This document shows positions 13,534 through 56,942 of a DNA stretch of 64,000 nt, in pieces (position 1 is the first letter of the stretch; every line of letters starts with the position of its first letter). The notes beneath the pieces are model-generated. The model did no database searches, was not told where the DNA came from, and saw nothing but the letters and a program-made list of their open reading frames with translations. The translations under genes and the position numbers were made by a program. Where the stretch lies: positions 186,001 through 250,000 of IMG/VR virus record IMGVR_UViG_3300023174_000038; one strand, given 5' to 3'.

Positions 13534-13534
13534 A

Positions 13535-13930: not shown

Positions 13931-13936
13931 ATATAT

Positions 13937-14014
13937 GCAACGGTGGCAGAGTGGTCCAATGCAACGGATTGCAAATCCGTAAAACCGTCAGTTCAAATCT
14001 GACCCGTTGCTCCA
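13937..14014 (+). tRNA. tRNA-Cys(GCA)
   Basis: ACGGA-TT GCA AA-TCCGT, U73-CCA. Confidence 0.93.
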
Positions 14015-14019
14015 AACAA

Positions 14020-14184: not shown

Positions 14185-14196
14185 AAATATATTTAT

Positions 14197-14270
14197 GCGG
14201 GGTTCGTATAGTGGTAATACCTCAGCCTTCCAAGCTGATGCGGAGAGTTCGATTCTCTTACCCCGCTCCA
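14197..14270 (+). tRNA. tRNA-Gly(TCC)
   Basis: TCAGC-CT TCC AA-GCTGA, U73-CCA. Confidence 0.95.
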
Positions 14271-14286
14271 TTATTATAAATATCAT

Positions 14287-14817
14287 ATGAAATTACTATT
14301 TGTGCCATTAGATATAAAAGTCACTGATATCAACTTTGATTTAGGTGAAAAACAAAACTATCACATAAATCATTGGGAAACATTTGATGTTATTGGGAAA
14401 GAAAATAATTATCAAAACTATAACAGTTTATTAAATCAACTTCCAATAACGGATATCACTATCTTTACACATAAGATTCAAAAAACTAAAATTGGACCTC
14501 ATTATGATTATCATGGTTTGCATGATGAATTATATAAACATTTCAAAGAAAATGAGCCAGCCGGCTATCATGTAGTTTTAAAAGGTAAAGGTGACTCATT
14601 AGAAATTTTTAACGGCAAAGAATGGATTAACCCTATATTACCTAAAGTGCCTATAGCATACTTACTAAATTTAACTTCTTGCATACATAGAGTAAAAGAA
14701 GATAATTCAAGAGAAACACTGTATATACAAGGTTGGTTAGATATTAAAAAACATAATCAATTAATAGAACGCAGTTTAAAACAATATGGCAATCTAGCAG
14801 TATATAGCCAAGCTTAA
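14287..14817 (+). CDS. Hypothetical protein, possible double-stranded beta-helix oxygenase
   Basis: PHYD...IHRV...R pattern; TATAAATA upstream. Confidence 0.5.
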   Translation: MKLLFVPLDIKVTDINFDLGEKQNYHINHWETFDVIGKENNYQNYNSLLNQLPITDITIFTHKIQKTKIGPHYDYHGLHDELYKHFKENEPAGYHVVLKGKGDSLEIFNGKEWINPILPKVPIAYLLNLTSCIHRVKEDNSRETLYIQGWLDIKKHNQLIERSLKQYGNLAVYSQA

Positions 14818-15093
14818 TTATTTACCAATTCTATTTAAAATGTTCATTGCTCTGGTTCTTAACCGTTCAGTAAATTCTGATTCAGTTAATGCTCCTTTAG
14901 CAAGATTACATTTTCTACAAGTTACTTGAAGATTATTATACGTGGTTTCTCCACCTTTACTTTCAGCAATCACATGATCTATGTGTATTTCTTTATCGGA
15001 TAAGTCTTCATCACAATAGACACACCATTTTCCGTCCCTTTCAATAACTCTACGACGTAGGTTAAGAGGGATGTATTGTTTCTTTTGTAGCAT
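14818..15093 (-). CDS. HNH endonuclease
   Basis: RDGKWCVYC, HIDHVIAESKGG, NLQVTCRKCNLAK. Confidence 0.9.
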   Translation of the reverse strand: MLQKKQYIPLNLRRRVIERDGKWCVYCDEDLSDKEIHIDHVIAESKGGETTYNNLQVTCRKCNLAKGALTESEFTERLRTRAMNILNRIGK

Positions 15094-15158
15094 AAATTTA
15101 TTTAGCTACCCAAATATAGTAGACAGATAAATAGTTTTCTGTTATTATGAATAATAAA

Positions 15159-15243
15159 GCGGACGTGGCGTAATTGGCAGCCGCACCAGATTTAGGTTCT
15201 GGCGTCGTAAGATGTGTGAGTTCGAGTCTCACCGTCCGCACCA
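15159..15243 (+). tRNA. tRNA-Leu(TAG)
   Basis: CCAGA-TT TAG GT-TCTGG, CCA. Confidence 0.95.
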
Positions 15244-15247
15244 AACA

Positions 15248-15321
15248 GGGGGATTGATGTAATGGGAGCCTGGGACCTTTGCAAGGTCTTCGTAACAGTT
15301 CGATTCTGTTATCCTCCACCA
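15248..15321 (+). tRNA. tRNA-Ala(TGC)
   Basis: GGACC-TT TGC AA-GGTCT; G3:U70; CCA. Confidence 0.9.
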
Positions 15322-15327
15322 AGATAG

Positions 15328-15402
15328 CGCGGGGTAGAGAAGTAGTAACTCATCAGGCTCATAACCTGAAGATCGGCGGTGCGAATCCGTCCCCCGCATC
15401 CA
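15328..15402 (+). tRNA. Initiator tRNA-fMet(CAT)
   Basis: CGCGGGG/CCCCGCA with C1:A72 mismatch; TCAGG-CT CAT AA-CCTGA. Confidence 0.9.
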
Positions 15403-15406
15403 GTTA

Positions 15407-15483
15407 CGGAGTGTGGCGCAGTCTGGTAGCGCACCTGGTTTGGGACCAGGGGGTCCAAGGTTCGAATCCTTGTACTCCGACCA
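15407..15483 (+). tRNA. tRNA-Pro(TGG)
   Basis: CCTGG-TT TGG GA-CCAGG, CCA. Confidence 0.95.
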
Positions 15484-15505
15484 ATGTTTTTAAAAAGGAA
15501 ATAGT

Positions 15506-15670
15506 ATGACATGCAGAGGATATGATGCGAAAGCAGTGAAAGTTTCAAAGACAGTTAAACGTGCCGCGGCAAAAATTATGGACAACCATAAGCGTGGTGA
15601 CTTTATTCGTAGTTATGTAGAGATTGAAAGAAGTAATTCACGTACAGGTTCTCGTAAGGATAGCAAATGA
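15506..15670 (+). CDS. Small basic hypothetical protein (MTCRGYDAK...)
   Basis: 54-aa ORF with AAGGA SD. Confidence 0.55.
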   Translation: MTCRGYDAKAVKVSKTVKRAAAKIMDNHKRGDFIRSYVEIERSNSRTGSRKDSK

Positions 15671-15846
15671 GTAAAGGTAGCTTGCCAAGACCTTATAGTG
15701 TTGATTTGAAAACTTTCAACAATAATTGGGATAATATCTTTCGCAAGCCTGATCCAAGAATTATTGAGGATCAAAAGAATGAAGATGAAGCATTTGAACA
15801 AATTGCTAGTCAATCAGAAGTTAAAGATAGTACCCAAGGTGGTTAA
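15667..15846 (+). CDS. Small hypothetical protein (MSKGSLPRP...)
   Basis: 59-aa ORF coupled by ATGA overlap. Confidence 0.55.
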   Translation: MSKGSLPRPYSVDLKTFNNNWDNIFRKPDPRIIEDQKNEDEAFEQIASQSEVKDSTQGG

Positions 15847-15855
15847 ATAGAATGT

Positions 15856-15930
15856 GGATCGTTAACTCAGTGGTAGAGTAGCGCCTTTACACGGCGAATG
15901 TCGGGAGTTCGACCCTCTCACGATCCACCA
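15856..15930 (+). tRNA. tRNA-Val(TAC)
   Basis: CGCC-TT TAC AC-GGCG, CCA. Confidence 0.93.
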
Positions 15931-15945
15931 AACAAAGGAGTAATT

Positions 15946-16086
15946 ATGAGCAAAAGTGAAGATGTAATTAATAGAGCATACGGACACATTGTCAAAGAAG
16001 TTACTCCGGTACTTATTTTTGATATTACTATATTTCGTGGTTTTAAATACTATTGGTACAAATTACTTAGAAAAGTAACAAGATAA
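15946..16086 (+). CDS. Small hypothetical protein
   Basis: AAGGAG SD then ATG 15946. Confidence 0.5.
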   Translation: MSKSEDVINRAYGHIVKEVTPVLIFDITIFRGFKYYWYKLLRKVTR

Positions 16087-16090
16087 AATT

Positions 16091-16627
16091 ATGGCACATC
16101 CGCAACAATTTAATTATATACAAAAACTTAAACTATTATATCCAACTCATTTCTTTAATAGCAAAGTACTTGAAGTGGGTAGTCTTAACATTAATGGTTC
16201 AATACGAATCTTTTTTAGTCATTGTGATTATTTAGGAATTGATGTTGGTCCGGGTAATGATGTTGACTTAGTATGTGAAGGTCAAACGTTAGATCATCCA
16301 GACAATACATATGATACAGTTGGTAGCTGTGAATGTTTTGAACATAATCCTTATTGGGTAGAAACATTCGTTAACATGCATCGTATGGCTAAACCAAATG
16401 GACTAGTGTTTATGACATGTGCTACTACTGGTAGACCAGAACACGGTACTACTCGTACTACACCACAAGATAGTCCTCTTACTACAGGTATAGGGTGGGA
16501 CTATTATAGAAATTTAACTGAAGAAGATTTCAGAAAAGAATTAGACATAGATAATATGTTTAGTACATATAAATTTGAAGTGGGTTCACCCCATGCAGAT
16601 TTGTATTTTTATGGTATTAAAAAATAA
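16091..16627 (+). CDS. Class I SAM-dependent methyltransferase
   Basis: VLEVGS, YLGIDVGPG, CFEHNP. Confidence 0.8.
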   Translation: MAHPQQFNYIQKLKLLYPTHFFNSKVLEVGSLNINGSIRIFFSHCDYLGIDVGPGNDVDLVCEGQTLDHPDNTYDTVGSCECFEHNPYWVETFVNMHRMAKPNGLVFMTCATTGRPEHGTTRTTPQDSPLTTGIGWDYYRNLTEEDFRKELDIDNMFSTYKFEVGSPHADLYFYGIKK

Positions 16628-16635
16628 AGGTAAAT

Positions 16636-16857
16636 ATGTCACAAAGCAGAGCAAGATATTCAAGTGAAGAAGCCGCACTTATGGTCGGTAATCGTTTTGA
16701 TTTAGTTCTTATCGCTTCACAAAGAGTAAGAGAATTAAAGCGAGGACATCGTTCACTACTTACTACTAAAGCAGGACCAATGGTAACTGCATTAGAAGAA
16801 ATTGAACAAGGACTTGTTGGACGTGAATATCTTAAACGTATTAGAAAAAATTTGTAA
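16636..16857 (+). CDS. rpoZ: RNA polymerase omega subunit
   Basis: ARYSSEEA..VGNRFDLVLIASQRVREL..ALEEIEQG. Confidence 0.9.
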   Translation: MSQSRARYSSEEAALMVGNRFDLVLIASQRVRELKRGHRSLLTTKAGPMVTALEEIEQGLVGREYLKRIRKNL

Positions 16858-16861
16858 ATAT

Positions 16862-16935
16862 ATCTCCCTAATGTAATGGCAGCATACCGGTCTCCAAAAC
16901 CGTTAGTCAAGGTTCGAGTCCTTGGGGGGATGCCA
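16862..16935 (+). tRNA. tRNA-Trp(CCA)
   Basis: CGGT-CT CCA AA-ACCG, G73-CCA. Confidence 0.9.
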
Positions 16936-17585: not shown

Positions 17586-18806
17586 TCATCTGACTATTTG
17601 ATTGTTAGAATAATCTTGTAGATACATACGACCTCTAGGTACTCTATTCTTTACAGCGTATTTTTCTAGGTCTTGCATAGCTTGTTGTTGTGTTTTATTT
17701 ACTGCGGTTGCAACTTGCCTTCCTGCATTATATATTCTCCAATCACTTATACGTGGACCTTCAGGTTCAGTAGGTTGTGTTGCTTGAGTTGGTTCAGGTT
17801 CAGCTGGTTGATTTACAAAAACATTATCATCCGGTGGTATATCCTTGCTCGGTGCACCTGGGGTTGATTTATAACTTTGAGGGAATTTTGCTACTATTTG
17901 TTTGGCAGCTTCTCTAACATCATATCCGTCAGGTGGACTAATTTCTTTACTACCGGCTTTTACTTCACCAGCTTTTGTAAGTATTGCTTTAACAATTTCT
18001 TTCATTAATCCGGGAAATCTTTTAGCAAACTCAGCATCAGCGCCAACTCTATTATATCTTTGATCCTGTGTACTATTTACAAGTTGACTAGTAGGTGCAT
18101 GTAATTGCCACTTTCCATTTTTATTATCAATGTTTTGTTTATCAACAATACTAACGATAGGACCATCAGGAGCATAATTATTAAACCAATTTAATCCACT
18201 AGATCCACCTGTACAGAAGTTACTCATGTGTCCTGTTTGGTTATTAAATGTATAACAAGCACCGTAGTTCAATGGCATGATAACATGAAATCTATCATTA
18301 TCTAGTAATACAATTTCTTTTCTATTACGTTTATGCTTTTCTAATGCTTCAGCATCTTTAATTCTTCGTAGAGTATTACGATACTCATCTTTTCCCATTG
18401 CCTGTTGTAATGCCCGTATACTAGGAAACTTATTAAAGTCTTGATCTGGCTTCTGTAATAAACCACGTGTACTTAATGCTTGCCATGCACCTAATGCATC
18501 TCCGCCCTCACCATTCAAATCTTCATAATCTATAGCATGATTGTTATATAGTTTTAATAACCAATTATCAAACTTACCTTCTTTGCTCAAATCACCATAC
18601 TCATTTTTAGCTAGTGTTTGATTAACTAATTTACTCCAAGATTGAACATAATCAGCGACTGTGGGTCTTGGACCCATATCTGCTATTTCATTTTTAGGGA
18701 ATGTCCTATCATGTCTGACAGCAATAGCTAACATTTTTGCTAGCTTTGGGTCCTTCATTATATTAGTACCTATATTAGCTTCTGTTAAAAAGTGTGTTGC
18801 TCTCAT
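17586..18806 (-). CDS. Hypothetical protein, possible virion internal protein
   Basis: 406-aa ORF; N-terminus MRATHFLTEA. Confidence 0.7.
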   Translation of the reverse strand: MRATHFLTEANIGTNIMKDPKLAKMLAIAVRHDRTFPKNEIADMGPRPTVADYVQSWSKLVNQTLAKNEYGDLSKEGKFDNWLLKLYNNHAIDYEDLNGEGGDALGAWQALSTRGLLQKPDQDFNKFPSIRALQQAMGKDEYRNTLRRIKDAEALEKHKRNRKEIVLLDNDRFHVIMPLNYGACYTFNNQTGHMSNFCTGGSSGLNWFNNYAPDGPIVSIVDKQNIDNKNGKWQLHAPTSQLVNSTQDQRYNRVGADAEFAKRFPGLMKEIVKAILTKAGEVKAGSKEISPPDGYDVREAAKQIVAKFPQSYKSTPGAPSKDIPPDDNVFVNQPAEPEPTQATQPTEPEGPRISDWRIYNAGRQVATAVNKTQQQAMQDLEKYAVKNRVPRGRMYLQDYSNNQIVR

Positions 18807-19708
18807 TATACTAAACTCCTTTTTAGATAAGCAAGAACCGCACTTAATTTCTGTCTATCTCCGTTAGCTATATCTGACAACACTTTTGTAGGACCGTCAT
18901 TCTTTTCTGATGATAAACTACTATCACGATATCTATAACCACTGGTTACATTACCTGTTAATTCTGGATAGTAATATCTTGCCGTTAAAACTATACTATT
19001 GTTTACAGCACTAGTAAGTAATTCAGTCATGGCACCATTATCTAAACCTTCAATTGCCTGATCAATTAATTTTACCTGATCAATTTTCTTATCTACTTTG
19101 TGATGAGCATCATTTTTTGCCATACTAGCAATAACGCCATTAATATCAGCTTTAGAAGCAATTAGTATTTTCTTAAAAAGTGGTTTGAATCGTTTGGTTA
19201 ATTTATTCGTAGTAGTAAAGCCTGCAGGCTCTGGTTTATTGCTAGCACGATCCTGGCGTAATTGTTTAGAGTACTCACTATCCATGAAGTAAAATTTTCT
19301 AGCATCACCTACAATCTTTTTTAACAAACTATTAGCATCGGTAACATTGTCTGCAAAGGTAGAATATACCATATTGCCCTCATCAGGATCAGGTTTACCG
19401 TTACTAGCGAATATTTGATATGAACCAGACCTTGATGCTCTTCTTCCATAGCTATCGGATACCATAAATCTTACTGCGCCGAATCCTTTATTACCTGCTA
19501 TTAATAACCATGTCCCGGGATGATCTTTTAGATCAGTCCATTTGGGTCTGACCGCAGGTTCAGGCTGAATATCATGACCAAAAGCTTCTTTAGAGTGTAA
19601 CTGTTTTAATATTTCTTGTGCACCTGGCCCGGTAAATTGAGCCATAGCTGTACTGGCTTCTGAAACTATGCTTTCGCATAATTGTGAAAAATACTTATAA
19701 TTATCCAT
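18806..19708 (-). CDS. Hypothetical protein, possible virion internal protein
   Basis: 300-aa ORF; N-terminus ...LCESIVSEA; TAAATA upstream. Confidence 0.7.
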   Translation of the reverse strand: MDNYKYFSQLCESIVSEASTAMAQFTGPGAQEILKQLHSKEAFGHDIQPEPAVRPKWTDLKDHPGTWLLIAGNKGFGAVRFMVSDSYGRRASRSGSYQIFASNGKPDPDEGNMVYSTFADNVTDANSLLKKIVGDARKFYFMDSEYSKQLRQDRASNKPEPAGFTTTNKLTKRFKPLFKKILIASKADINGVIASMAKNDAHHKVDKKIDQVKLIDQAIEGLDNGAMTELLTSAVNNSIVLTARYYYPELTGNVTSGYRYRDSSLSSEKNDGPTKVLSDIANGDRQKLSAVLAYLKRSLV

Positions 19709-19729
19709 ATATGTATTTATTCTTTCCGT

Positions 19730-35110: not shown

Positions 35111-35437
35111 TCAGGATGGACTAAAACTACTCCCGCATCCGCATGTTGTTACCGCATTAGGATTACTGATTTTGAACTGCGAACCGTTCAAATCTTCAAC
35201 ATAATCTATGCTGGCATTCTGTAAATATTGTGCTGATATGCTATCAACCAACATACTTAATGACCCTACAGGTATCTCAAAATCATCTTCATTTTGTTCT
35301 TCATCTATAGTAAAACCATATTGCATTCCACTACATCCTCCACCTTGAACAAATACACGAATTCTAGCTTTTGGATTGTTTTCCTCTGCTAAAATATCAG
35401 CTATCTTTATAGTAGCATTCTCTGTTATTGCTATCAT
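35111..35437 (-). CDS. erpA: Fe-S cluster insertion protein ErpA/IscA
   Basis: [20 protein letters not shown]. Confidence 0.9.
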
Positions 35438-35988
35438 AAACTCTTACCCCATCTTGTGTTAATTACATTCCAATTGATGATTTTCCATTGTTCTTTTAGA
35501 TACTTTTGCTTATCACTACCATAATCTAATATCCAGGCATGCTCCCATCTATCAACTAATAACAATATATCATTACGTACTGCATGGTTCTTAATTGTTT
35601 TAATCTTACCATCAGTTGCTAAGTATACCCATCCAGATCCTTCTAACTTCATGAATTCAATTTCAAACTGAGACTTCATATCGTCATATGTTTTATAATG
35701 TTTGTTGATAAAACCTAACATAGGGCCGTTTGGCTTGTTGTTATTTCTAACTTCACGGAATTGTGGGAATAATGTGTTATGCAAGAAAGCACCTGCATAG
35801 TTGAAATCTTTGTCACCCTCACCCTTGTTATAACGTTCGGCATAGCCCTTAGCTAGTTTATCATAATGTAGGTCAAGGGTATCCTGGCTTAAAACAGGTT
35901 TAACCTCACTCGCAGTGAAGTTTAGTGGTATGATTTCTATGTCTTGAGGTTTAGCTTTATCCTCAAGTAATTGAATTATATCTCTCAT
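35434..35988 (-). CDS. Fe/Mn superoxide dismutase
   Basis: LHY, FLHN, GSGWVYL, DRWEHAW. Confidence 0.88.
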
Positions 35989-36053
35989 ACATATATTTAT
36001 TCATTTTTAATAAAAGGACATAAATAAATTATAAGGAGTGAAATCTAACTATT

Positions 36054-36824
36054 ATGGATGAAAAATATAAATTTAGGGGAGAAAGAATTTCTGAAGCTAA
36101 AAGAATGAAACAATCAGAATTTTTAAACAGAGCCACATCTGTGCATGGTAGTAGATATGATTATTCTAAATCATTGTATGTGAATGCACATACCAAAATA
36201 AAAATTGGTTGTTCAGAACACGGAATATTTGAACAGAGACCTCACGACCACGTTAAAGGTAAAAACGGATGCCCAGTATGTGGCGCAATTAACAGAAGAA
36301 AAAACCATTCAAAACAAGCATTTGATAAATTTTTAATATTAGCAAAAAAAATACATCAAAACAAATATCAATATATTGTTGAATCATATACCGGGATAAC
36401 AGATTTGATGGAAATAGTTTGTCCAATACATGGTGTATTTAAACAAAGTGCTGATATTCATAAAAGAGGAAATGGGTGCCAAAGGTGCGGCTCCGGTCCT
36501 ATTTCAAATATGTCACAACAATGGCTTGATTCTTTGAATATAGTAGACCGAGAATATTGGATAACAATTAATGAAAAAAGATATAAAGTAGATGGATATG
36601 ATATTAATTCAAATACCATTTACGAATTTTTAGGTGATTATTGGCATGGAAATCCAAAAGTACATCACCCAGAAAAAATTAATTCGCATAATAAACATAC
36701 CTTTAAGGAACTATATGAAGGTACTATTGTAAGATTAGAAATTTTTAAAAAAGCAGGATATAATTTAGTTTTTATATGGGAAAATGATTATTTAAAGCCG
36801 TCTGACAATTCTTCCCTTGGATAA
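36054..36824 (+). CDS. Putative homing endonuclease (Zn-ribbon repeats plus PD-(D/E)xK domain)
   Basis: Two C..HG.F.Q...H..G.GC..CG repeats; [16 protein letters not shown]. Confidence 0.8.
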
Positions 36825-37004
36825 ATCATACGGTGAAAATTCTATTAAAACCGTATCCCCTAACAAAATTTTAATATCATGCTGGCGCATCTTGCCAGAG
36901 ATATAACCTATTACATTTGTGTTATTTACTTTAACACGAAACATGGCATTGGGTAACACATCTGTTACCGTACCATCCATTCGTAAACCTTCTTCTTTTG
37001 CCAT
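36792..37004 (-). CDS. infA: Translation initiation factor IF-1
   Basis: [43 protein letters not shown]. Confidence 0.95.
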
Positions 37005-37026
37005 GTGTTTTGCTTTACGCTCCTTT

Positions 37027-37422
37027 TTAATTCCTACGCATTGTGCTAATTGCTTTAGCCTCTTCATCACTAAAGACCGGCACAGCATTACTTTTATGCA
37101 TAGTGCCAATCCCAATAATTTTATTACCTGTATATTGTGGAATATCTTTAGTGCGTACCGCACCTTTGTGACCTGTATCTAAACTGTTAATACGTACAGA
37201 CTCACGACCTACGGGTGCAGATAGTGTATATTGTAATGGTTCTGCCGCTAAAGCACGTTTGCGCTTTTTGTCATCCGCATCAACTTCCCATTTTTTTTGT
37301 AGTTCTTTCCAGTCGGCATCAAGCTGACGGGCTTTTTGTGCCTCTGCGCTATTGCGAAACTTAATTTTGCCTTTGCGTTTACCGCCGGTATTAAGCCAGG
37401 GTCCTTCTAAATGCATGGTCAT
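37027..37422 (-). CDS. Hypothetical protein
   Basis: [20 protein letters not shown]. Confidence 0.7.
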
Positions 37423-37487
37423 GATGTGTGGGTCATAGTTATTAAACAGTTATAATTATAGCAAAATATGGATTATTTGTCAAGTTT

Positions 37488-37871
37488 TTACTTCTTTAAT
37501 ATTGCCCAAACACGCTCTTTTTCTATGATCTCGGCTTCTAATTCTTTATAGCGTTTACCCAATTCTTTTAGTTCATCCCATCTATCTTCTAGTTCGGGAT
37601 TGGTGTGAAGAATCGCTAATCGTTCTTCAATCTTAGAAAACATATCAGTAAGGCTTTTGCCCTTGATAGTTACTTCACCTTCAAAATCAGCATTACCCTT
37701 TACAGATAGAGAATTACCTTTAAGGCTAGGATCAGTTGAAATAACGTTTGAGGTACCATTTAAACCCCAATATATCCCATTTGAAGTAGTATTAGGTATA
37801 GTAACTGTACCGGTGGTAACCGTATTGAAAGAATCACCTATCATAGTGTTATTATAATTTGGATAACTCAT
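37488..37871 (-). CDS. Hypothetical protein
   Basis: ORF, C-terminal coiled coil. Confidence 0.65.
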   Translation of the reverse strand: MSYPNYNNTMIGDSFNTVTTGTVTIPNTTSNGIYWGLNGTSNVISTDPSLKGNSLSVKGNADFEGEVTIKGKSLTDMFSKIEERLAILHTNPELEDRWDELKELGKRYKELEAEIIEKERVWAILKK

Positions 37872-38053
37872 TTGTTTGCTCGTTTTAAGATATATTTGCC
37901 CTTCTCATCTATAGCAAATTCAATCTCATCACCCTCACGCCAGCCTAATTCATCTAACAATTGTTGTGGTATAGGCAACATTAAATCGCCTGTTTCAGGA
38001 TCTTCATGTGTAATTACTTCATAACGAACTAAATCTTTGCCAAGTTTCTTCAT
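37868..38053 (-). CDS. AbrB/MazE-type DNA-binding protein
   Basis: GDLMLPIPQQLLDELGWREGDEIEF. Confidence 0.75.
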   Translation of the reverse strand: MKKLGKDLVRYEVITHEDPETGDLMLPIPQQLLDELGWREGDEIEFAIDEKGKYILKRANK

Positions 38054-38061
38054 ATCAATAC

Positions 38062-38619
38062 TTATCTAGTTAGATAGGGGGCATAAATCTTTTCTAGTGA
38101 ATTAATAGTATGCTCAGTATTTTCATCCTCATGCTTAACAGCAATGCCACCTGCATTACTCCAAAGATTTAAATACTTACCATAATCATCTACTAAGACA
38201 TTTGGCTCACTATTACTCAATGCGTATTTGTGTTTATGTTGAGTAAAGATAGCATTTTGTGTAGCATTTGGATTGTGTTCATCTAACCAATCTTTTTTAG
38301 CTTCTACACTAGCACTAGCATATGGTCCACGTAATGGGGCACTTAATACAGTATATGGAATTTTATGTTGATTTAACCATTGTACAACTTTGCCTCCGCC
38401 TTGAAGAGGTTTTAGTTCTCTAAAAAACTTATATACTTCTTCAGGGCTACTTGAAGCTAACTCATTTATTGATGTTTCAGTATCAGGAATCTCTTTGTAA
38501 TTACCAACATTATGTTTTGCGGCCCAAGCCCCAAAGAAATCAGCTTGTACTCCATCCATATCTAAGTATAGATGCGGCATCTTTTTGTTTGTATTTTCCA
38601 TCAATTCCTTAAGTTTCAT
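38062..38619 (-). CDS. 5'(3')-deoxyribonucleotidase, HAD family
   Basis: LDMDGV, LSAP, KKDWL, LVDD. Confidence 0.85.
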   Translation of the reverse strand: MKLKELMENTNKKMPHLYLDMDGVQADFFGAWAAKHNVGNYKEIPDTETSINELASSSPEEVYKFFRELKPLQGGGKVVQWLNQHKIPYTVLSAPLRGPYASASVEAKKDWLDEHNPNATQNAIFTQHKHKYALSNSEPNVLVDDYGKYLNLWSNAGGIAVKHEDENTEHTINSLEKIYAPYLTR

Positions 38620-38626: not shown

Positions 38627-39163
38627 TTATATCACAAACGGTATAATAAGCCAAATGCCTTGGGCTAATAGTAATGAACCAAATATACTAACTCCAATAC
38701 TACCCCAATACATACGTTTATCTACAGCTAGAATACTAGCAGATAATAACACAATAGCTAATTGAAATGCCATTGCGGCAAATGTTAACCATGGCGTATG
38801 CTTTTTGGCTTCATCACGTTCACTTTCAATCTGTAATGCTTTAGCCATTAACTCTTTCTTGCCCTCACCTTTAGCCGGATCACTTTCATAACGGTCAATC
38901 TTAGCTTGTAATATTTCTTTACGTTTTATATCGGTAGTAGCTTCTAATTGCCCTTCAGCAATACTTTGCTTGATAGATTTTGCTTGGTAAAAGTTCCAAG
39001 TATCATTTGCTTTGATAGTGTTACTTAATATTTTACCACTAAATCCACTAGACATATAGGTTGTAATTGCTAATAATAGTGCAATGACAGTAATTACCCA
39101 TCCTGCTCTATCTTTAATTTGTGCTTCACGTTCACTGCGTGATAATGTTTTTACTTCTGCCAT
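38627..39163 (-). CDS. DUF4337-like membrane protein
   Basis: ANDTWNFYQAKSIKQ; three TM segments. Confidence 0.7.
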   Translation of the reverse strand: MAEVKTLSRSEREAQIKDRAGWVITVIALLLAITTYMSSGFSGKILSNTIKANDTWNFYQAKSIKQSIAEGQLEATTDIKRKEILQAKIDRYESDPAKGEGKKELMAKALQIESERDEAKKHTPWLTFAAMAFQLAIVLLSASILAVDKRMYWGSIGVSIFGSLLLAQGIWLIIPFVI

Positions 39164-39397
39164 TTTGTTTCCTTTAGTATTATGCTATTTTATTGAATTT
39201 GTTCAATTAAATATATATTTATACCCAATCTGAAGGAGTAAGCCTATGAGTTGGTTCAAGCATAAACCCAGAACAAAAACACCCCCAAAATTACATGCAC
39301 ATCATTCAAGCCCTATAGCAGAAAAACTATTAAAAGAGACAAAACTTGAAGTAACTGGCGTAAAAGCTAAGTTAGCAGAACAAGAAAAAAAGAAAAA

Positions 39398-49930: not shown

Positions 49931-51007
49931 ATGAGATATACTGAATTTACAAGAACTTTGGTTGAAGCTGTTGACCAAATTAAAACTGTTACCAAACATG
50001 ATGTGGAACAGACTTTGCGTAAAGCTGGGTATGAAGATTTCAAAATCAACGGCAATAAAATCAACGTTTTGGTACAGATACCTGATGGTGCAAAGAAAGC
50101 TGAATTTCGCAATGATATCTTACAAGAAGTATTGGCTGTACTCAAAAAAGCATATCCACAAGATGGGGTAGAGTATTCAAGTGATCCTGGTATTAGTAGT
50201 TTGGGTGGTATAATATTTGCTAATAGTCCTGTACAAGTTGTTGTAAAAGACAGTGGTAAACAGGGTGAAAAAAGTGCTGGTGTAGCTAACGAAATAGAAT
50301 TAGCTAGTATTATTCAATCAGTAGTTGAAACATATGGTTCAGCTAATGTAACATTTGTTGATCCACGTGGTAAGAAGATGACCATTAAGAACTGCATAAA
50401 TGTTGACGTTGCAGGGCGTGATACAGGTGGACGCAAAAAAGCTGACGTAGTGTTACAAAGTCCTAAAGGATTCTTGCCAATTAGTATTAAGAAATTAGAT
50501 GCTGATATGTGGGAAAGTGCTGACAATTTGTTTGGTCAACGTGCCCGTAGTATCTTAGATAGTTTGGTAAAGAACGGTGATGTTAAACTTAATAAGATTG
50601 GCGAACGCAAGTCAAAAACAGGAAGTGTTCCTGTATATGAATTAAGTAAAGAGATTGTTATGGAGCCTACTGAAGAAGAAGCATTAAATGCAATCTTTGG
50701 TAGTGATTTAAATCCTAAAGGTGGAATTGTTATTCAGACCTTTAAGCCAGAGCATTTTGTACAAGATGGTGCTACTGTAACTGTTGATGCACATGCTGTT
50801 ATTACTAGTGCAGCCGATATACCAGAAAGTCATTTAATGGTTTGGTTGTTACGTAATGATAGTACACGTAATGGTGGTAGTTTAGGTGTTGCTGGTATTC
50901 GTCCCTTAGGAGTTACATTAACTCGCGGTATAGGTAAGAAGGGTACAAAAGATGTTATCTTAGTGGATCAACACGGTAACGTAGTTAAGAATCCAAATAT
51001 CAAATAA
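49931..51007 (+). CDS. PD-(D/E)xK-like nuclease-fold protein
   Basis: GVANE...KKADVVL...ISIKK; N-terminus MRYTEFTRTLVEA. Confidence 0.55.
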   Translation: MRYTEFTRTLVEAVDQIKTVTKHDVEQTLRKAGYEDFKINGNKINVLVQIPDGAKKAEFRNDILQEVLAVLKKAYPQDGVEYSSDPGISSLGGIIFANSPVQVVVKDSGKQGEKSAGVANEIELASIIQSVVETYGSANVTFVDPRGKKMTIKNCINVDVAGRDTGGRKKADVVLQSPKGFLPISIKKLDADMWESADNLFGQRARSILDSLVKNGDVKLNKIGERKSKTGSVPVYELSKEIVMEPTEEEALNAIFGSDLNPKGGIVIQTFKPEHFVQDGATVTVDAHAVITSAADIPESHLMVWLLRNDSTRNGGSLGVAGIRPLGVTLTRGIGKKGTKDVILVDQHGNVVKNPNIK

Positions 51008-53517: not shown

Positions 53518-55413
53518 TTAAATTGATTCTTTAACTTCTGCATCAACTACATTGTCATCAGACTTTTGTGATTGAGATGCCTCTTTAGCTTTTTGTTCCT
53601 CTTCGGATTTAACCTTAGTAATAGGACCAATAGCTTCATATAGTTCTTTAACCTTGTTGTCAATGGCTTCAACATCGGTTCCGGCTAATGCAACTTCTAG
53701 TGCATCAATAGCATTAGATGCTTTTTCTTTTTCTTCGGCTGACACTTTGTCACCGTATTTTTCATAATCTTTACGGAAACTATTTAATGTTGATTCACCA
53801 CTATTTTTTGTTTGAATGAACTTAACTTGTTTAGCATCAGATTCAGCATTCGCTTCAGCTTCATCAACCATCTGTTGAATTTCTCTTTCAGATAATCCTG
53901 AATCAGATTTGATTGTAATCTTATTCTCTTTACCAGTACCTTTGTCTCTAGCACTTACATTAAGAATACCATTAGCATCAATATCTAATGTAACTTCAAT
54001 TTGCGGGACACCTCGCATTGCAGGAGGAATACCCTCTAAATTAAATTCACCCAATGACTTGTTATATGTAAACAAATCACGTTCACCTTGTGCAACTTTA
54101 ATAGTTACGGCTGGCTGATTGTCATCTGCTGTACTGAATACTTGACTATGTTTAGTTGGAATAGTTGTATTCTTTTTAATTAATTTAGTGAATACACCAC
54201 CTGAGGTTTCAATACCTAAGCTTAATGGTGTTACATCTAGTAACAATACGTCGGTACGTTCACCGGCTAATACACTACCTTGAAGTGCCGCACCTGCTGC
54301 CACTGCTTCATCTGGGTTAACATCTTTACGTGGTTGTTTACCAAATAACGCTTCAACCGTTTCCTGTACCTTAGGCATACGTGTCATACCACCAACAAGA
54401 ATAACCTCATCAATATCAGATGTAGATACACCTGCATCTTTCATGGCTTGCTTGCATGGCTGAATACTACGTTGGATTAATTCATCTACCAATGATTCTA
54501 ATTTGGCACGACTTAATTTAACATTTAAATGTTTAGGACCACTAGCATCTGCTGTAATATAAGGTAAGTTAACATCTGTTTGTGCTGAACTTGACAATTC
54601 AATTTTAGCCTTTTCAGCCGCTTCTTTTAAGCGTTGTAGTGCTAGCATATCTTTCTTAAGGTCAACCGCATTGTCTTTCTTAAATTCATCAACCAAGTAA
54701 TCCATGATACGTTGGTCAAAGTCTTCACCACCTAAGAATGTATCACCATTAGTTGATAATACTTCAATTTGAGTTTCACCTTCAACGTCTGCTAATTCAA
54801 TGATAGATACATCAAATGTACCACCACCTAAGTCATAGACAGCAATCTTACGATCCTTCTTGTCTTGTTTGTCTACGCCATATGCTAACGCAGCCGCTGT
54901 GGGTTCGTTGATAATACGCAATACTTCTAAACCAGCAATGCGTCCTGCATCTTTAGTAGCTTGTCTTTGACTGTCATTGAAGTAAGCTGGTACTGTAATA
55001 ACTGCTTGAGTAACTGTTGTACCCAAATAGTCTTCCGCAGTCTTTTTCATTTTGCGTAGTACTTCAGCACTGATTTGTGGTGGGGCTAATTTTTGTCCGT
55101 TTACTTCTACCCATGCATCACTATTCTCGTTTTTAACGATTTTATATGGCATTAAATCAATATCTTTTTGAACAGCGTTTTCTGTGAACTTACGTCCAAT
55201 TAATCGCTTGGCAGCATAGATAGTGTTTTTTGGGTTTGTAACTGATTGACGTTTGGCACTTGCACCTACTAGAATCTCATCATTGGCATAGGCAACGATT
55301 GAGGGTGTAGTTCTTGTACCTTCACTATTTTCAATTATTTTGGGAATTCCGTTTTCAATAACGGCTACACAGGAATTTGTGGTTCCGAGATCTATTCCAA
55401 TTACTTTGCTCAT
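53518..55413 (-). CDS. dnaK: DnaK / Hsp70
   Basis: [25 protein letters not shown]; start MSKV after AGGAG. Confidence 0.98.
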
Positions 55414-55482
55414 TGTTTTCTCCTTTGTAAAGCAAGATTTTTTCTCTATAGACCCGTTAGGCATCTATAGAAAAGTATTTAT
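55414..55482 (-). promoter_or_regulatory. TAAATA promoter and ROSE-like thermometer of dnaK
   Basis: CUAUAGAUGCC..GGGUCUAUAG hairpin then UCUUGCUU-UACA-AAGGAGA. Confidence 0.65.
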
Positions 55483-55521: not shown

Positions 55522-55740
55522 TTAATACAACTTTTTAGGCAATTGCTGGTCACGCAAATATTTGTCCCAACGTCTTTTAGCCTGACTTTTAGCTAGTTTA
55601 CGTTTAACTGTAGGTTTCACAAATTCTTGTCGGTCACGGGTTTCTTGTAAAGTACCATAATCTGTAATCATTTTCTTGAACTTACGTAAGGCCTTTTCTG
55701 TATTTCCGTCATTAACTAAAACTTTGCGTCCTCTAATCAT
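55522..55740 (-). CDS. rpsU: Ribosomal protein S21
   Basis: EKALRKFKK...RQEFVKPTVKRK. Confidence 0.88.
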   Translation of the reverse strand: MIRGRKVLVNDGNTEKALRKFKKMITDYGTLQETRDRQEFVKPTVKRKLAKSQAKRRWDKYLRDQQLPKKLY

Positions 55741-56942
55741 ATTGCGGCTTTTGGCTGTAAAATTTGCTCCTGATTAATATTTATCTTTTTAATGTTGTTT
55801 TCACGGTACTTCTTAGTGTTATACATATGAGGCATTAAAACCTTCTCAATCTCTGTATGTAAACCACGAGCACCGGTCTTTAATTTCATTGTATTTTCAG
55901 CTAACTGAGAAATAGCATCTTCTGTAAAATTTAACTCAATATCATCTAAACTTAATAGATACTTATATTGGTCGATATAGTTGTTTTTAACTTTTGTCAG
56001 GACCTGAACCATTTCGTCTTTTGTAAGATTTTCAACATTTACTGTAGTAGTAAAACGTCCGATGAATTCAGGAATCATACCAAATCGTGTTAAATCATCC
56101 GGGCTAACCATAGATAAATCACCCTCTTTGCGGGAGTCCTTAATATCAGCACCAAATCCAATACTAGTTCCATTGATACGATTGTTAACAATATCCTTTA
56201 ATCCAACAAATGCACCACCGGCAATGAATAGAATGTTCTTTGTATTAACCTCAATCATATCACCACTAGGATGCTTACGTCCTCCACCAGCTGGGATACG
56301 ACATGTTGTACCCTCAACCATCTTTAATAGTGCTTGTTGTACACCTTCGCCGGATACGTCACGGGTAATACTTGCACCTTCGCTTTTACGGGCAATTTTG
56401 TCAATCTCATCAACAAACACAATACCACGTTCTGCCAGTTTAGCATCACCACCGGCAGCATTAACTAGCATACTAATCATTGATTCAACATCATCACCTA
56501 CATATCCAGCCTCGGTCAAGCTAGTAGCATCAGCAACAATAAAGGGCACTTCTAAGTATTTTGCTACAGTTTTAGCTAATAGTGTTTTACCTGAACCTGT
56601 TGGTCCAATTAATAATACGTTACCTTTTTGTATTTCTAAGTCTTTTGGCGGATTATTAATACGTTTATAGTGATTAGCAATAGCTACACTAAGAACCATT
56701 TTAGCATTAATTTGACCAATAATATGTTGGTCTAAAAATTCTTTAATAGTTTCCGGATCATATCTTATATGGTCTTTGTTTATTGAATCTTCGGAATTGT
56801 TATTTTCATCAACCATTAATTGAGTACATAACTCAATACAGTCGCTACAGATAGCAACATCTTCTCCGACAATTAATTTATTTACGACATCTTTATGATT
56901 GCCGCAAAATGAGCAATGGCTTAATTTTGTTTCTGTTGACAT
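55737..56942 (-). CDS. clpX: ClpX ATPase
   Basis: CSFCG..ICSDC Zn finger, GPTGSGKT, DEIDK, RKH, IGF. Confidence 0.97.
   Translation of the reverse strand: MSTETKLSHCSFCGNHKDVVNKLIVGEDVAICSDCIELCTQLMVDENNNSEDSINKDHIRYDPETIKEFLDQHIIGQINAKMVLSVAIANHYKRINNPPKDLEIQKGNVLLIGPTGSGKTLLAKTVAKYLEVPFIVADATSLTEAGYVGDDVESMISMLVNAAGGDAKLAERGIVFVDEIDKIARKSEGASITRDVSGEGVQQALLKMVEGTTCRIPAGGGRKHPSGDMIEVNTKNILFIAGGAFVGLKDIVNNRINGTSIGFGADIKDSRKEGDLSMVSPDDLTRFGMIPEFIGRFTTTVNVENLTKDEMVQVLTKVKNNYIDQYKYLLSLDDIELNFTEDAISQLAENTMKLKTGARGLHTEIEKVLMPHMYNTKKYRENNIKKININQEQILQPKAAI

What the first reader, a model, noticed from the sequence alone, without database searches (positions are those of the whole stretch)
35434..38619. 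Capsid-targeting-like N-termini on SOD and a nucleotidase
Seen: N-terminal extensions MRDIIQLLE (SOD) and MKLKELME (HAD nucleotidase), with similar MRATHFLTEA (18806), MDNYKYFSQLCE..SEA (19708) and MRYTEFTRTLVEA (49931). Established: T4 internal proteins carry an about 10-aa capsid-targeting sequence (MKTYQEFIAE type) cleaved after Glu by the prohead protease. Inference: these enzymes are packaged and injected with the DNA.
Basis: inference. Interest (0 to 1): 0.6.

Follow-up and report, generated by a model that had tools for sequence, protein, structure and literature searches.

The report
Capsid-targeting tags on phage SOD, nucleotidase
A 349-kb freshwater jumbo phage of the T4 superfamily puts a short, conserved N-terminal tag resembling T4's capsid-targeting sequence on many proteins, including a nucleotidase and, in a divergent form, a superoxide dismutase, so these enzymes are probably loaded into the phage head, though this remains unproven.

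Summary
The window lies in a 348,701-bp freshwater jumbo phage related to RaK2, 121Q and PA5oct. It encodes a T4 gp21-type prohead protease and a gp23-type capsid protein.

A tight N-terminal module, M-R-A-x-E-F-[IL]-x-E, recurs at exact N-termini. A regex finds 8 cases against 0.06 expected, and 5 related genomes hold 22 DNA-pattern hits against 0 in a control. It shares the EFIxE core of T4's capsid-targeting sequence, MKTYQEFIAE.

- **Nucleotidase:** its tag (MKLKELME) is kept in orthologues down to 34% identity. A linker of variable length follows, and some orthologues lack the tag altogether.
- **SOD:** its 14-16-residue extension (MRDIIQLLE) is a divergent variant. M1, R2 and E9 are invariant. 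Cellular SODs and a related Vibrio phage's SOD lack the extension.
- **SOD context:** the gene sits behind a late-promoter-like ATAAATA-N5-ATG. In 40 of 80 related loci it directly abuts a tag-bearing gene.
- **Cultured relative:** the PA5oct homologue carries ...ISIAE|A and was detected in a virion preparation that was not clean.

Packaging, cleavage and injection remain inferred. I rate this a new variant of a known kind.

The parts
35434..35988 (-). Fe/Mn-type superoxide dismutase gene, 184 aa. It has an N-terminal extension of 14-16 residues and a shortened alpha-hairpin domain.
   Evidence: Pfam Sod_Fe_C 2e-20; Sod_Fe_N from residue 18, below its cut-off. PDB alignment places residue 18 at residue 4 of 1ues/1qnn and shows about 16 residues missing from the hairpin. 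H41, H70, D146 and H150 are invariant in 36 homologues; their assignment as the four metal ligands is by position in the alignment and textbook knowledge.
35962..35988 (-). Codons 1-9 of the [12 protein letters not shown]. Proposed divergent capsid-targeting or propeptide tag ending in L-L-E.
   Evidence: M1, R2 and E9 are invariant in 114 distinct homologues. Mean entropy is 0.56 bits, the same as the enzyme body at 0.55. PSSM p = 0.005. An unrelated 108-aa ORF in L110 starts MRDLLTLLE.
35941..35961 (-). Codons 10-16 of the SOD, DKAKPQD. Linker between the tag and the SOD fold.
   Evidence: Positions 10-15 are more variable (0.95 bits) than the tag or the fold. They lie upstream of the part that aligns to cellular SODs.
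35994..36000 (-). ATAAATA, 5 nt before the SOD start codon. Late-promoter-like site that would give a leaderless or nearly leaderless mRNA.
   Evidence: Sequence read. Genome-wide, ATAAATA lies 3-6 nt (16 genes) or 17-24 nt (20 genes) before starts. Those genes include large terminase, baseplate wedge and virion structural proteins. The same arrangement is kept before the SOD in 42 of 80 related loci.
38062..38619 (-). NT5C-family (HAD) 5'(3')-deoxyribonucleotidase-like gene, 185 aa.
   Evidence: Pfam NT5C 2.4e-9, 37.7 bits against a cut-off of 24.8, from residue 17. phrog_2643 5'-3' deoxyribonucleotidase 4e-24. The DMDGV motif is read directly.
38596..38619 (-). Codons 1-8 of the nucleotidase, MKLKELME. 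Capsid-targeting-like tag ending in L-M-E.
   Evidence: Matches the strict regex. Orthologues at 34-95% identity keep M-[KR]-[IL]-x-[ED]-[LIV]-[LFM]-E. The variants MRIRELLEE and MRINELFEE score above every null 9-mer on the family matrix.
38581..38595 (-). Codons 9-13 of the nucleotidase, NTNKK. Variable linker before Met14-PHLYLDMDG.
   Evidence: In orthologues the linker varies in length and sequence (DTNKK, EIESEPEAK, SKVRARK, SAEPTGSS). Some orthologues have no tag at all (MKNKPYLYLD).
38627..39163 (-). DUF4337 membrane-protein gene. It ends 7 nt before the nucleotidase start, so the two are probably co-transcribed.
   Evidence: Pfam DUF4337 2.5e-31. The spacing is read.
39216..39223 (-). 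TATAAATA, a perfect T4 late-promoter consensus, 52 nt upstream of the DUF4337 start. Candidate promoter for the DUF4337-nucleotidase pair.
   Evidence: Upstream sequence printed. That TATAAATA is the T4 late promoter is established knowledge, not tested here.
17586..18806 (-). 406-aa protein of unknown function starting MRATHFLTE|A. A clear member of the tag family.
   Evidence: Regex hit. PSSM score 14.9, above every null 9-mer. Orthologues keep MRA[TI][HN]FLxE|AD. No Pfam or PHROG hit.
18806..19708 (-). 300-aa protein of unknown function starting MDNYKYFSQLCESIVSEA. It is preceded by ATAAATA-N5-ATG (ATAAATA at 19714-19720) and overlaps the start of the 406-aa tag-bearing gene.
   Evidence: The N-terminus and promoter are conserved in 17 related loci. 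It does not match the family matrix, p = 0.68. The L-C-E and V-S-E sites are read directly.
49931..51007 (+). 358-aa protein (phrog_12709, unknown function) starting MRYTEFTRTLVE|A. A longer variant of the tag.
   Evidence: 33 orthologues printed (of 35 related loci, 50-96% identity) keep M-R-[YH]-x-E-[FI] and, in nearly all, a hydrophobic-x-E shortly after. A hypervariable linker follows, Pro/Ala-rich in some, and differs in length by tens of residues.

Best explanation
The window belongs to a freshwater jumbo myovirus of the T4 superfamily, in the RaK2/121Q/PA5oct branch.

This branch uses a short N-terminal propeptide with consensus M-R-A-[TNKS]-E-F-[IL]-x-E, most often followed by a small residue. 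It is one residue shorter than T4's MKTYQEFIAE and shares its EFIxE core.

By analogy with T4, the tag would:
1. dock the protein onto the scaffolding core while the prohead assembles;
2. be cut off after the Glu by the gp21-type prohead protease;
3. leave the mature protein trapped in the DNA-filled head.

The NT5C-type nucleotidase carries a good copy of this tag (MKLKELME plus a variable linker). The Fe/Mn SOD carries a divergent copy (MRDIIQLLE plus the linker DKAKPQD). Both genes appear to be expressed late. The SOD would come from a leaderless-type ATAAATA promoter. The nucleotidase would come from a TATAAATA upstream of the preceding gene.

The enzymes would then ride in the capsid. There they would either enter the next host with the DNA or protect the packaged genome. 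For the SOD this means removing superoxide in the virion or at the onset of infection.

Shown here:
- the extensions exist and are conserved;
- the motif is over-represented at N-termini;
- the tag is dispensable in some homologues;
- the protease and capsid protein are of T4 type;
- the promoter-like motif has a fixed position before late genes;
- in relatives the SOD gene sits among tag-bearing genes.

Inferred: docking to the core, cleavage after Glu, presence in virions, ejection, and the physiological role.
For: 1. T4-type machinery. Peptidase_S77 scores 97 bits and Gp23 scores 329 bits. The capsid protein has I-L-E34 and L-A-E43 just upstream of the stretch that aligns to residue 15 of mature T4 gp23*. 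The scaffold protein starts MLDAIKPLLE.

2. Motif family.
- The strict regex hits 8 N-termini against 0.06 expected, with 1 internal hit.
- The DNA pattern for MRAxEFhxE gives 22 hits in 5 related genomes against 0 for the reversed control. Codons differ synonymously.
- 100 distinct N-termini give the consensus.
- T4's CTS is MKTYQEFIAE (PMC8442874). With Gln5 removed it scores p = 0.0006 on the family matrix.

3. Tag-linker-domain architecture.
- Nucleotidase orthologues keep the tag while the linker varies. Some lack the tag.
- The 358-aa protein shows the same pattern, with linkers that differ by tens of residues.

4. SOD.
- The extension is absent from cellular SODs and from the SOD of Vibrio phage 2.275.O. 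That phage's capsid protein is the closest found among deposited phages, at 67% identity.
- M1, R2 and E9 are invariant.
- Matrix p = 0.005, rank 15 of 341 N-termini.
- ATAAATA-N5-ATG is conserved in 42 of 80 loci. The same motif precedes terminase, baseplate and virion genes.
- In 40 of 80 related loci an immediately adjacent same-strand gene carries the strict tag. The background is 2.3% of genes.

5. Cultured relative. PA5oct gp261 is 36% identical to the SOD, and the two capsid proteins are 66% identical. It starts MNDSIKKYISIAE|AASSVKK and is marked ESI-MS/MS, meaning it was found in virion particles.

6. Precedents.
- T4 packages enzymes such as Alt and foreign proteins through such propeptides (PMC9026906).
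- Bubblegrams indicate internal proteins in 121Q and phAPEC6 heads (PMC7247149).
- Chlorovirus PBCV-1 expresses a Cu/Zn SOD late and packages it (PMC7019647).
Against: There are no proteomic or N-terminal data for this uncultured phage.

The SOD tag departs from the family at positions 3, 5 and 6 (D, I, Q instead of A, E, F). By register with T4 residues 4 and 7, positions 3 and 6 of the 9-mer would be the targeting positions (PMC9026906). The residue after the Glu is usually D or E rather than A, S or G.

The SOD 'linker' is only moderately variable among the close homologues seen; K11, P14 and D16 are nearly or fully invariant. The extension could therefore be part of the enzyme. This is more plausible because the alpha-hairpin is shortened.

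The PA5oct virion list includes ribonucleotide reductase, thymidylate synthase, ligase and ClpP, so gp261 may be carry-over.

In PA5oct the association of the motif with virion proteins is weak. The loose pattern gives 6/90 against 4/238, p = 0.03, and the strict pattern is not significant.

The window's nucleotidase has a Shine-Dalgarno-like AAGGA before Met7, which would skip the tag.

The AlphaFold model of the SOD was too poor to say how the extension sits.
Confidence: 0.55

Rival explanations
1. The motif family is a genuine capsid-targeting tag and the nucleotidase may carry it, but the SOD does not. Its N-terminal helix would be part of the enzyme, for example an oligomerisation or stabilising element that compensates for the shortened alpha-hairpin. 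The SOD would work in the infected cell's cytoplasm as a late-expressed auxiliary gene.
For: - The SOD tag mismatches the family consensus at positions 3, 5 and 6.
- K11, P14 and D16 in the supposed linker are nearly or fully invariant.
- About 16 residues are missing from the hairpin domain.
- Its PA5oct homologue lies among ClpX, ClpS and FtsH proteostasis genes, and that virion list contains contaminating enzymes.
Against: - The SOD of the related Vibrio phage 2.275.O lacks the extension and keeps the short, about 190-residue architecture of this phage SOD group.
- M1-R2 and [LI]-x-E9 are invariant, as in the tag family.
- An unrelated 108-aa ORF has the same MRDLLTLLE start.
- In half of the related loci the SOD gene abuts tag-bearing genes.
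- The PA5oct extension differs in sequence but again ends in I-A-E|A.
Confidence: 0.25
2. The shared N-terminal module is a signal for something other than the capsid. One candidate is recognition by the phage's own ClpX/ClpP or DnaK system, giving timed degradation or folding of late proteins. Another is docking to some other assembly.
For: - The phage encodes ClpX and an Hsp70/DnaK in the same window.
- From memory, not tested here: ClpX recognises some substrates through N-terminal Met-basic-hydrophobic motifs.
- The carriers are functionally heterogeneous: a sigma-70 region 4 protein, a GP88 domain, DUF6321 and enzymes.
Against: - The module shares its EFIxE core, its length and its position at residue 1 with the experimentally defined T4 CTS.
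- It always ends in hydrophobic-x-Glu, the gp21-type cleavage signature, and such a protease is present.
- PA5oct virion-detected proteins include MKINDIITE, MKIKDILVE, MRLNEINLIE and MKILEFNLTE starts.
- Heterogeneous cargo is exactly what T4 internal proteins look like (PMC3012670).
Confidence: 0.12
3. The resemblance is chance. Short Met-basic...hydrophobic-x-Glu strings are common at N-termini of AT-rich phage genes and carry no shared function.
For: - The loose [LIVMF]xE criterion is not enriched at N-termini.
- The medium pattern still expects about 4 chance hits among 74 M[KR] starts.
Against: - 8 observed against 0.06 expected for the strict pattern.
- 22 against 0 in relatives.
- Conservation is at protein level across 34-96% identity while the adjoining linkers vary.
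Confidence: 0.03

Closest known systems
T4 capsid-targeting sequence (CTS) of internal proteins IPI/IPII/IPIII, and the propeptides of Alt
   Same: - A tag of about 10 residues at the very N-terminus, beginning Met-basic and ending hydrophobic-x-Glu.
- The core E-F-I-x-E is identical to T4's MKTYQEFIAE.
- A gp21-type protease and a gp23-type capsid protein are present.
- Cargo is heterogeneous and hypervariable. Cargo genes cluster and are swapped between relatives.
- The tag is dispensable for the cargo's fold.
   Different: - The consensus is one residue shorter and starts MRA rather than MKT.
- It occurs in the RaK2/PA5oct-like jumbo branch, where I found no description of a CTS.
- The cargo here includes recognisable enzymes (SOD, HAD nucleotidase) and a sigma-70 region 4 protein, rather than small basic anti-restriction proteins.
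- Targeting and cleavage have not been demonstrated.
Pseudomonas phage PA5oct gp261 (EST35_0261), an unannotated Fe/Mn SOD homologue
   Same: - 36% identical to the window's SOD, and the phage is related (capsid protein 66% identical).
- It has an N-terminal extension outside the SOD fold that ends in I-A-E|A.
- It is listed among proteins detected by ESI-MS/MS in virion particles.
   Different: - The extension is 4 residues longer before the Glu and has a different sequence (MNDSIKKYISIAE).
- It is annotated only as a hypothetical protein.
- The virion preparation also yielded clearly cytoplasmic enzymes.
- No N-terminal mapping is available.
Virion-packaged Cu/Zn superoxide dismutase of chlorovirus PBCV-1 (A245R)
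   Same: A virus-encoded SOD that is expressed late, packaged in the virion, and thought to lower superoxide early in the next infection (PMC7019647).
   Different: - An unrelated SOD family (Cu/Zn rather than Fe/Mn).
- A eukaryotic giant virus with an internal membrane, not a tailed phage.
- No propeptide or protease-based loading is known for it.
Propeptide-processed head and ejection proteins of phiKZ-like and SPN3US giant phages
   Same: Many head-internal proteins are loaded through N-terminal propeptides. A distant gp21 homologue removes them by cleaving after Glu (PMC9026906).
   Different: - Those propeptides are long and diverse, without a short shared N-terminal tag.
- The protease is highly diverged, whereas here it is a clear Peptidase_S77 hit.

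Membership tests
T4-type CTS-tagged capsid cargo (internal proteins) | The phage encodes a T4 gp21-type prohead serine protease and a gp23-type major capsid protein with a cleavable N-terminal segment. | tested here: met
   PF03420 scores 97 bits against a cut-off of 27. PF07068 scores 329 bits. I-L-E34 and L-A-E43 precede the region that aligns to mature gp23* residue 15. Cleavage itself has not been shown.
T4-type CTS-tagged capsid cargo (internal proteins) | A tag of about 10 residues at residue 1, similar to MKTYQEFIAE and ending in hydrophobic-x-Glu. | tested here: met
   Met for the family and the nucleotidase: regex 8 against 0.06, consensus MRAxEF[IL]xE, and T4 CTS minus Gln5 at p = 0.0006. 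The SOD meets M-basic and L-x-E but not the central E-F, p = 0.005.
T4-type CTS-tagged capsid cargo (internal proteins) | The tag is an add-on outside the cargo's fold, separable from it. | tested here: met
   The SOD extension is absent from cellular SODs and from Vibrio phage 2.275.O. Some nucleotidase orthologues lack the tag, and the linker is variable.
T4-type CTS-tagged capsid cargo (internal proteins) | The gene is expressed late, when proheads assemble. | tested here: inconclusive
   ATAAATA-N5-ATG lies before the SOD. The same motif is positioned before terminase, baseplate and virion genes. TATAAATA lies upstream of the DUF4337-nucleotidase pair. No RNA data exist.
T4-type CTS-tagged capsid cargo (internal proteins) | The protein is physically present inside mature virions. 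| not testable with these tools
   Only indirect evidence: PA5oct gp261 is flagged ESI-MS/MS in a virion preparation that also contained cytoplasmic enzymes.
T4-type CTS-tagged capsid cargo (internal proteins) | The prohead protease removes the tag by cleaving after the Glu. | not testable with these tools
   No N-terminal data exist.
T4-type CTS-tagged capsid cargo (internal proteins) | The protein is ejected into the host with the DNA. | not testable with these tools
   The phage is uncultured, found in lake and freshwater metagenomes of 8 studies.
Fe/Mn superoxide dismutase (PF00081 + PF02777) | Both Pfam domains score above their gathering thresholds. | tested here: inconclusive
   The C-terminal domain scores 73.1 bits against a cut-off of 20.9. 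The N-terminal hairpin scores 23.4 bits against a cut-off of 27 and covers only profile positions 3-47 of 82. About 16 residues are deleted.
Fe/Mn superoxide dismutase (PF00081 + PF02777) | The four metal ligands (His, His, Asp, His) and the gateway Tyr are present. | tested here: met
   H41, H70, D146, H150 and Y49 are invariant in 36 homologues. The C-terminal D-x-W-E-H-A block aligns with 1ues. The identification of these residues as ligands is by position and textbook knowledge. Activity has not been assayed.
NT5C / HAD 5'(3')-deoxyribonucleotidase (PF06941) | The Pfam model scores above its threshold and HAD motif I (DxDxV) is present. | tested here: met
   37.7 bits against a cut-off of 24.8. 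phrog_2643 scores 4e-24. DMDGV at residues 20-24 and VLVDDY are read directly. Substrate is unknown, and no PDB relative was found by sequence.

The most novel reading that the evidence does not exclude
A whole branch of environmental jumbo phages uses a T4-like N-terminal 'address tag' as a general, swappable loading system. It would fill the capsid with working enzymes and regulators: an Fe/Mn superoxide dismutase, HAD nucleotidases and a sigma-70 region 4 protein. The virion would then deliver an antioxidant, a nucleotide-pool modifier and a transcription hijacker together with the DNA. The SOD would be the first phage enzyme known to be packaged to deal with reactive oxygen, either inside the sun-exposed virion or at the first moments of infection.
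Probability: 0.35. Interest if true: 0.75.

Novelty: new variant of a known kind. Interest (0 to 1): 0.6.

Why it matters
If the tag works as in T4, cargo can be read straight from sequence. Any protein in this widespread freshwater phage group that starts M-R-A-x-E-F-[IL]-x-E would be predicted to travel in the capsid.

That would give a testable list of what these uncultured giants inject. The list includes enzymes (SOD, nucleotidases) and a sigma-factor-like protein, a kind of cargo not seen among T4's small anti-restriction internal proteins.

It would extend the CTS principle from T-even phages to the RaK2/PA5oct jumbo branch, where internal head proteins have been seen by bubblegram but not explained.

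It would also point to oxidative stress as something a phage prepares for before infection. PA5oct offers a cultured system in which to test all of this.

Tried and rejected
- **Loose criterion.** [LIVMF]xE at positions 8-14 is not enriched at N-termini. I dropped it in favour of tighter patterns.
- **'MRAMALYLKE' on the prohead protease.** This was a longest-ORF artefact with a TTG start 2 nt after the Shine-Dalgarno sequence. The likely start is MALYLKE, so I did not count it.
- **Structure of the SOD.** The AlphaFold2 model from 36 close homologues was poor (mean pLDDT 58.6, with residues 1-13 a helix below 50). It says nothing about how the extension packs.
- **Complex prediction.** Prohead protease with SOD residues 1-45 gave no verdict, with a score of 0.00. 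This is neither support nor evidence against.
- **PDB sequence search with the nucleotidase.** No hits.
- **DNA search of the region against deposited phages.** Only trivial matches.
- **Sequencing runs.** Only DNA metagenomes hold the stretch and there are no RNA runs, so transcript 5' ends could not be checked.
- **PA5oct supplementary proteome table.** Not held. The earlier preprint does not name the SOD. The MIJ3 proteome covers only four major bands.
- **PA5oct motif-versus-virion test.** Weak: p = 0.03 for the loose pattern and not significant for the strict one.
- **Big representative-protein search.** Not run. The operators called it costly, and the claim does not rest on absence of relatives.
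- **Translation-signal hypothesis.** I considered that the tag is a nucleotide-level signal for leaderless mRNAs. Tagged genes occur both with Shine-Dalgarno leaders and with leaderless-type promoters, and codons vary synonymously, so I rejected it.

Full report
**What the window is.** The 64-kb window is positions 186001-250000 of a single 348,701-bp virus record with 36% G+C. CheckV rates the record complete. It encodes a T4 gp21-type prohead protease (Peptidase_S77, 97 bits) and a gp23-type major capsid protein (329 bits). The capsid protein is 64-67% identical to those of Vibrio phage 2.275.O, Pseudomonas phage PA5oct/MIJ3 and the 121Q/PBECO4 (RaK2-like) coliphages. The stretch occurs in lake and freshwater metagenomes from eight studies, and no RNA run holds it. 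It is therefore an uncultured freshwater jumbo myovirus of the T4 superfamily.

**Checking the observation.**
- The gene at 35434-35988 (-) is an Fe/Mn-type SOD (Sod_Fe_C 2e-20). Its residue 18 aligns with residue 4 of cellular SODs 1ues and 1qnn. It therefore has 14-16 extra N-terminal residues. It also lacks about 16 residues of the alpha-hairpin.
- H41, H70, D146, H150 and Y49 are invariant in homologues. By position these are the four metal ligands and the gateway Tyr.
- The gene at 38062-38619 (-) is an NT5C/HAD nucleotidase (Pfam 37.7 bits, phrog_2643). Its DMDGV motif begins at residue 20, so it has a 13-residue extension before Met14.

**Is it more than chance?**
- A loose hydrophobic-x-Glu rule is not enriched at N-termini.
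- A tight family is. M[KRN]xx[EDHQ][FLIVM][FLIVMY]x?E occurs at 8 N-termini of 341 crudely called genes against 0.06 expected, with one internal hit. The members are MRAIEFVTE, MRAKEFITE, MRATHFLTE (window 18806), MRATEFIIE, MRAIELYE, MRFTEIITE, MNFVELFE and the nucleotidase's MKLKELME.
- The degenerate DNA pattern for M-R-A-x-E-F-h-x-E gives 3-6 hits in each of five related genomes of 303-525 kb. That is 22 in all against 0 for the reversed control, with synonymous codon differences.
- One hundred distinct such N-termini from this clade give the consensus M R A [TNKS] E F [IL] [T..] E, followed most often by A, S or G.
- T4's capsid-targeting sequence is MKTYQEFIAE (PMC8442874). The clade consensus is one residue shorter and shares E-F-I-x-E. 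With Gln5 removed, the T4 tag scores in the top 0.06% on the family matrix.

**The nucleotidase.**
- Thirty-seven orthologues in related IMG/VR loci, 34-95% identical, mostly start M-[KR]-[IL]-x-[ED]-[LIV]-[LFM]-E. Examples are MKIKDLME, MRIRELLEE, MKITELFE and MKIQELLE.
- A linker of variable length and sequence follows (DTNKK, EIESEPEAK, SKVRARK, SAEPTGSS), and then the conserved PHLYLDMDG.
- Several orthologues have no later Met, so Met1 must be their start. A few have no tag at all, for example MKNKPYLYLD.
- This conserved-tag, variable-linker, dispensable-for-the-fold pattern is what a targeting propeptide should look like.
- The one caveat is an AAGGA before Met7 in the window's copy, with no Shine-Dalgarno sequence before Met1. 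Met1 lies 7 nt after the stop of the upstream DUF4337 gene, so translational coupling is plausible.

**The other examples.**
- The 358-aa protein at 49931 shows the same architecture even more clearly. M-R-[YH]-x-E-[FI] and, in nearly all, a hydrophobic-x-E shortly after are kept in the 33 orthologues printed (50-96% identity). A hypervariable linker follows, Pro/Ala-rich in some, and differs by tens of residues.
- The 406-aa protein at 18806 is a textbook member.
- The 300-aa protein at 19708 is not a member by sequence (p = 0.68). It does have conserved L-C-E and V-S-E sites, a conserved ATAAATA-N5-ATG, and overlaps the start of the 406-aa gene.

**The SOD.** Its tag MRDIIQLLE is a divergent variant. 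It matches the family at M1, R2, L7 and E9 and has hydrophobic residues at positions 4 and 8, as some members do. It fails at positions 3, 5 and 6. It scores p = 0.005 and ranks 15th of 341 N-termini. Six independent lines favour a shared function.
1. In 114 distinct homologues (77-97% identical) M1, R2 and E9 are invariant. The tag is as constrained as the enzyme (0.56 against 0.55 bits). Positions 10-15 are looser at 0.95 bits.
2. The extension is missing from cellular SODs and from the SOD of Vibrio phage 2.275.O.
3. An unrelated 108-aa ORF in a 525-kb relative starts MRDLLTLLE behind the same promoter arrangement.
4. The SOD start is preceded by ATAAATA-N5. Genome-wide, ATAAATA sits either 3-6 nt (16 genes) or 17-24 nt (20 genes) before start codons. 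The genes with an ATAAATA close upstream include large terminase, baseplate wedge and virion structural proteins. The arrangement persists before the SOD in 42 of 80 related loci even though the surrounding sequence differs. This argues for late expression and for Met1 as the start.
5. In 40 of 80 related loci the gene immediately before or after the SOD carries the strict tag. It is on the same strand and usually has overlapping stop and start codons. Such neighbours start MRATEFITE, MRANEFITE, MNFKELME or MKIKHLME and range from 160 to 837 aa. The background is 2.3% of genes. These loci are phylogenetically related, so the count overstates independence, but the neighbours are many different proteins.
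6. The homologue in cultured PA5oct (EST35_0261, 36% identical) starts MNDSIKKYISIAE|AASSVKK before the SOD fold. It carries the GenBank note ESI-MS/MS.

**Limits of the PA5oct evidence.**
- The 93 flagged proteins include ribonucleotide reductase, thymidylate synthase, ligase and ClpP, so the preparation carried abundant non-structural proteins.
- Several flagged proteins have family-like starts: MKINDIITE, MKIKDILVE, MRLNEINLIE and MKILEFNLTE.
- The association is statistically weak. The loose pattern gives 6/90 against 4/238, Fisher p = 0.03, and the strict pattern is not significant.

**Protease specificity.**
- The capsid protein has I-L-E34 and L-A-E43 immediately before the segment that aligns with residue 15 of mature T4 gp23*.
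- The scaffold protein begins MLDAIKPLLE.
- This is consistent with T4-like cutting after hydrophobic-x-Glu but does not prove it.
- In T4, tag residues 4 and 7 govern targeting and residues 8 and 10 govern processing (PMC9026906).

**Best explanation and rivals.**
- The best reading is that the clade uses a T4-like capsid-targeting propeptide. The nucleotidase is a good carrier and the SOD a probable, divergent one. Both would be loaded into proheads, trimmed after Glu, and carried in the head. My confidence in the whole chain is 0.55. It is higher, about 0.8, for the existence of the tag family.
- The main rival (0.25) keeps the tag family but treats the SOD's extra helix as part of the enzyme.
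- A second rival (0.12) gives the tag another role, such as recognition by the phage's ClpX or DnaK.
- Pure chance is essentially excluded (0.03).
- Precedents for packaged enzymes are T4 Alt and engineered CTS fusions, internal proteins seen by bubblegram in 121Q and phAPEC6, and the late-expressed, virion-packaged Cu/Zn SOD of chlorovirus PBCV-1.

**Novelty.** I found no description of a CTS in the RaK2/PA5oct branch, nor of a tagged or packaged phage SOD, in the searched literature. The principle is known from T4. The consensus, the lineage and the enzymatic cargo are new, so I rate it a new variant of a known kind. Everything beyond sequence (presence in virions, cleavage, ejection, role) needs the experiments listed, for which PA5oct is the practical model.

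Noticed in passing
Whole genome (G000), for example window 35994-36000, 19714-19720 and 39216-39223: The late-promoter-like motif ATAAATA has a bimodal position. It lies 3-6 nt before the start codon with no room for a Shine-Dalgarno sequence (16 genes, including large terminase, a virion structural protein and the SOD). Or it lies 17-24 nt before the start (20 genes, including baseplate wedge and virion structural proteins), usually with a GGA/AGGA-like stretch between. The first class implies leaderless or nearly leaderless late mRNAs in a T4-superfamily phage.
   Followed up: partly
G000:C1:284983-285936 (-) = L085:983-1936: A 317-aa protein with a sigma-70 region 4 domain (Pfam 8e-19; PHROG sigma factor) starts MRAIELYE|S and is preceded by ATAAATA-N5-ATG. 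If the tag means packaging, this phage would carry a sigma-factor-like protein in its head.
   Followed up: partly
window 35111-35437 (-): An IscA/HesB-type Fe-S cluster biosynthesis protein (Pfam 6e-19) overlaps the SOD stop codon (ATGA). It stays close downstream of the SOD in relatives, directly after it in L041 and after three tag-bearing genes in L062. This suggests a functional iron-handling pair. It has no tag.
   Followed up: no
window 36054-36824 (+): A homing-endonuclease-like gene (PHROG endonuclease/HNH, 3e-25) lies on the opposite strand between the SOD and an IF-1 homologue. In relatives that position is often occupied by tag-bearing genes.
   Followed up: no
window 7529-16935 (+): There is a block of 25 tRNA genes. 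The 22 anticodons cover 19 amino acids; no tRNA-Phe was found.
   Followed up: no
window 36792-37163 (-), 53518-55464 (-), 55737-56942 (-), 3877-5016 (+): Host-like genes are present: translation initiation factor IF-1 (5e-21), a full-length Hsp70/DnaK (8e-259), ClpX with its zinc finger, and a protein with a cytochrome P450 C-terminal match.
   Followed up: no
G000:C1:261485-262810 (+) = L084:485-1810, residue 321: The only internal hit of the strict tag...YTK-MKIEELITE-GENW, lies just before a DUF6321 domain (residues 341-417). In PHROGs that domain also occurs in proteins of only 99-156 residues. The 441-aa protein, which itself starts MRFTEIITE, may be a fusion of two tagged genes or may carry an internal processing site.
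   Followed up: no
L041:3355-3981 (+) and L092:938-1528 (+): A second HAD-like protein in a 335-kb relative starts MKIIEILKE|Y before an FDIDDTL motif. The NT5C homologue of the T4-like Pelagibacter phage HTVC008M has a 22-residue extension starting MKYSAFKAE. Tagged HAD phosphatases may be a recurrent cargo.
   Followed up: no
G000:C1:57050-75040 (-): There is a single 5,996-aa ORF next to the baseplate wedge gene. It resembles the 3,857-aa virion protein gp128 of PA5oct in position and in N-terminus: MATRIRTLNFLPEIF against MATLKTFNKLPGIF.
   Followed up: no
L088:7291-7590 (+) (genome 97291-97590): The small ORF after the portal gene contains MHLFEMFTPAIE|GYQD. Its PA5oct counterpart gp150 (73 aa, virion-detected) starts MKINDIITE|GYYN. 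Both look like tagged prohead-core proteins of the gp67/gp68 kind.
   Followed up: no
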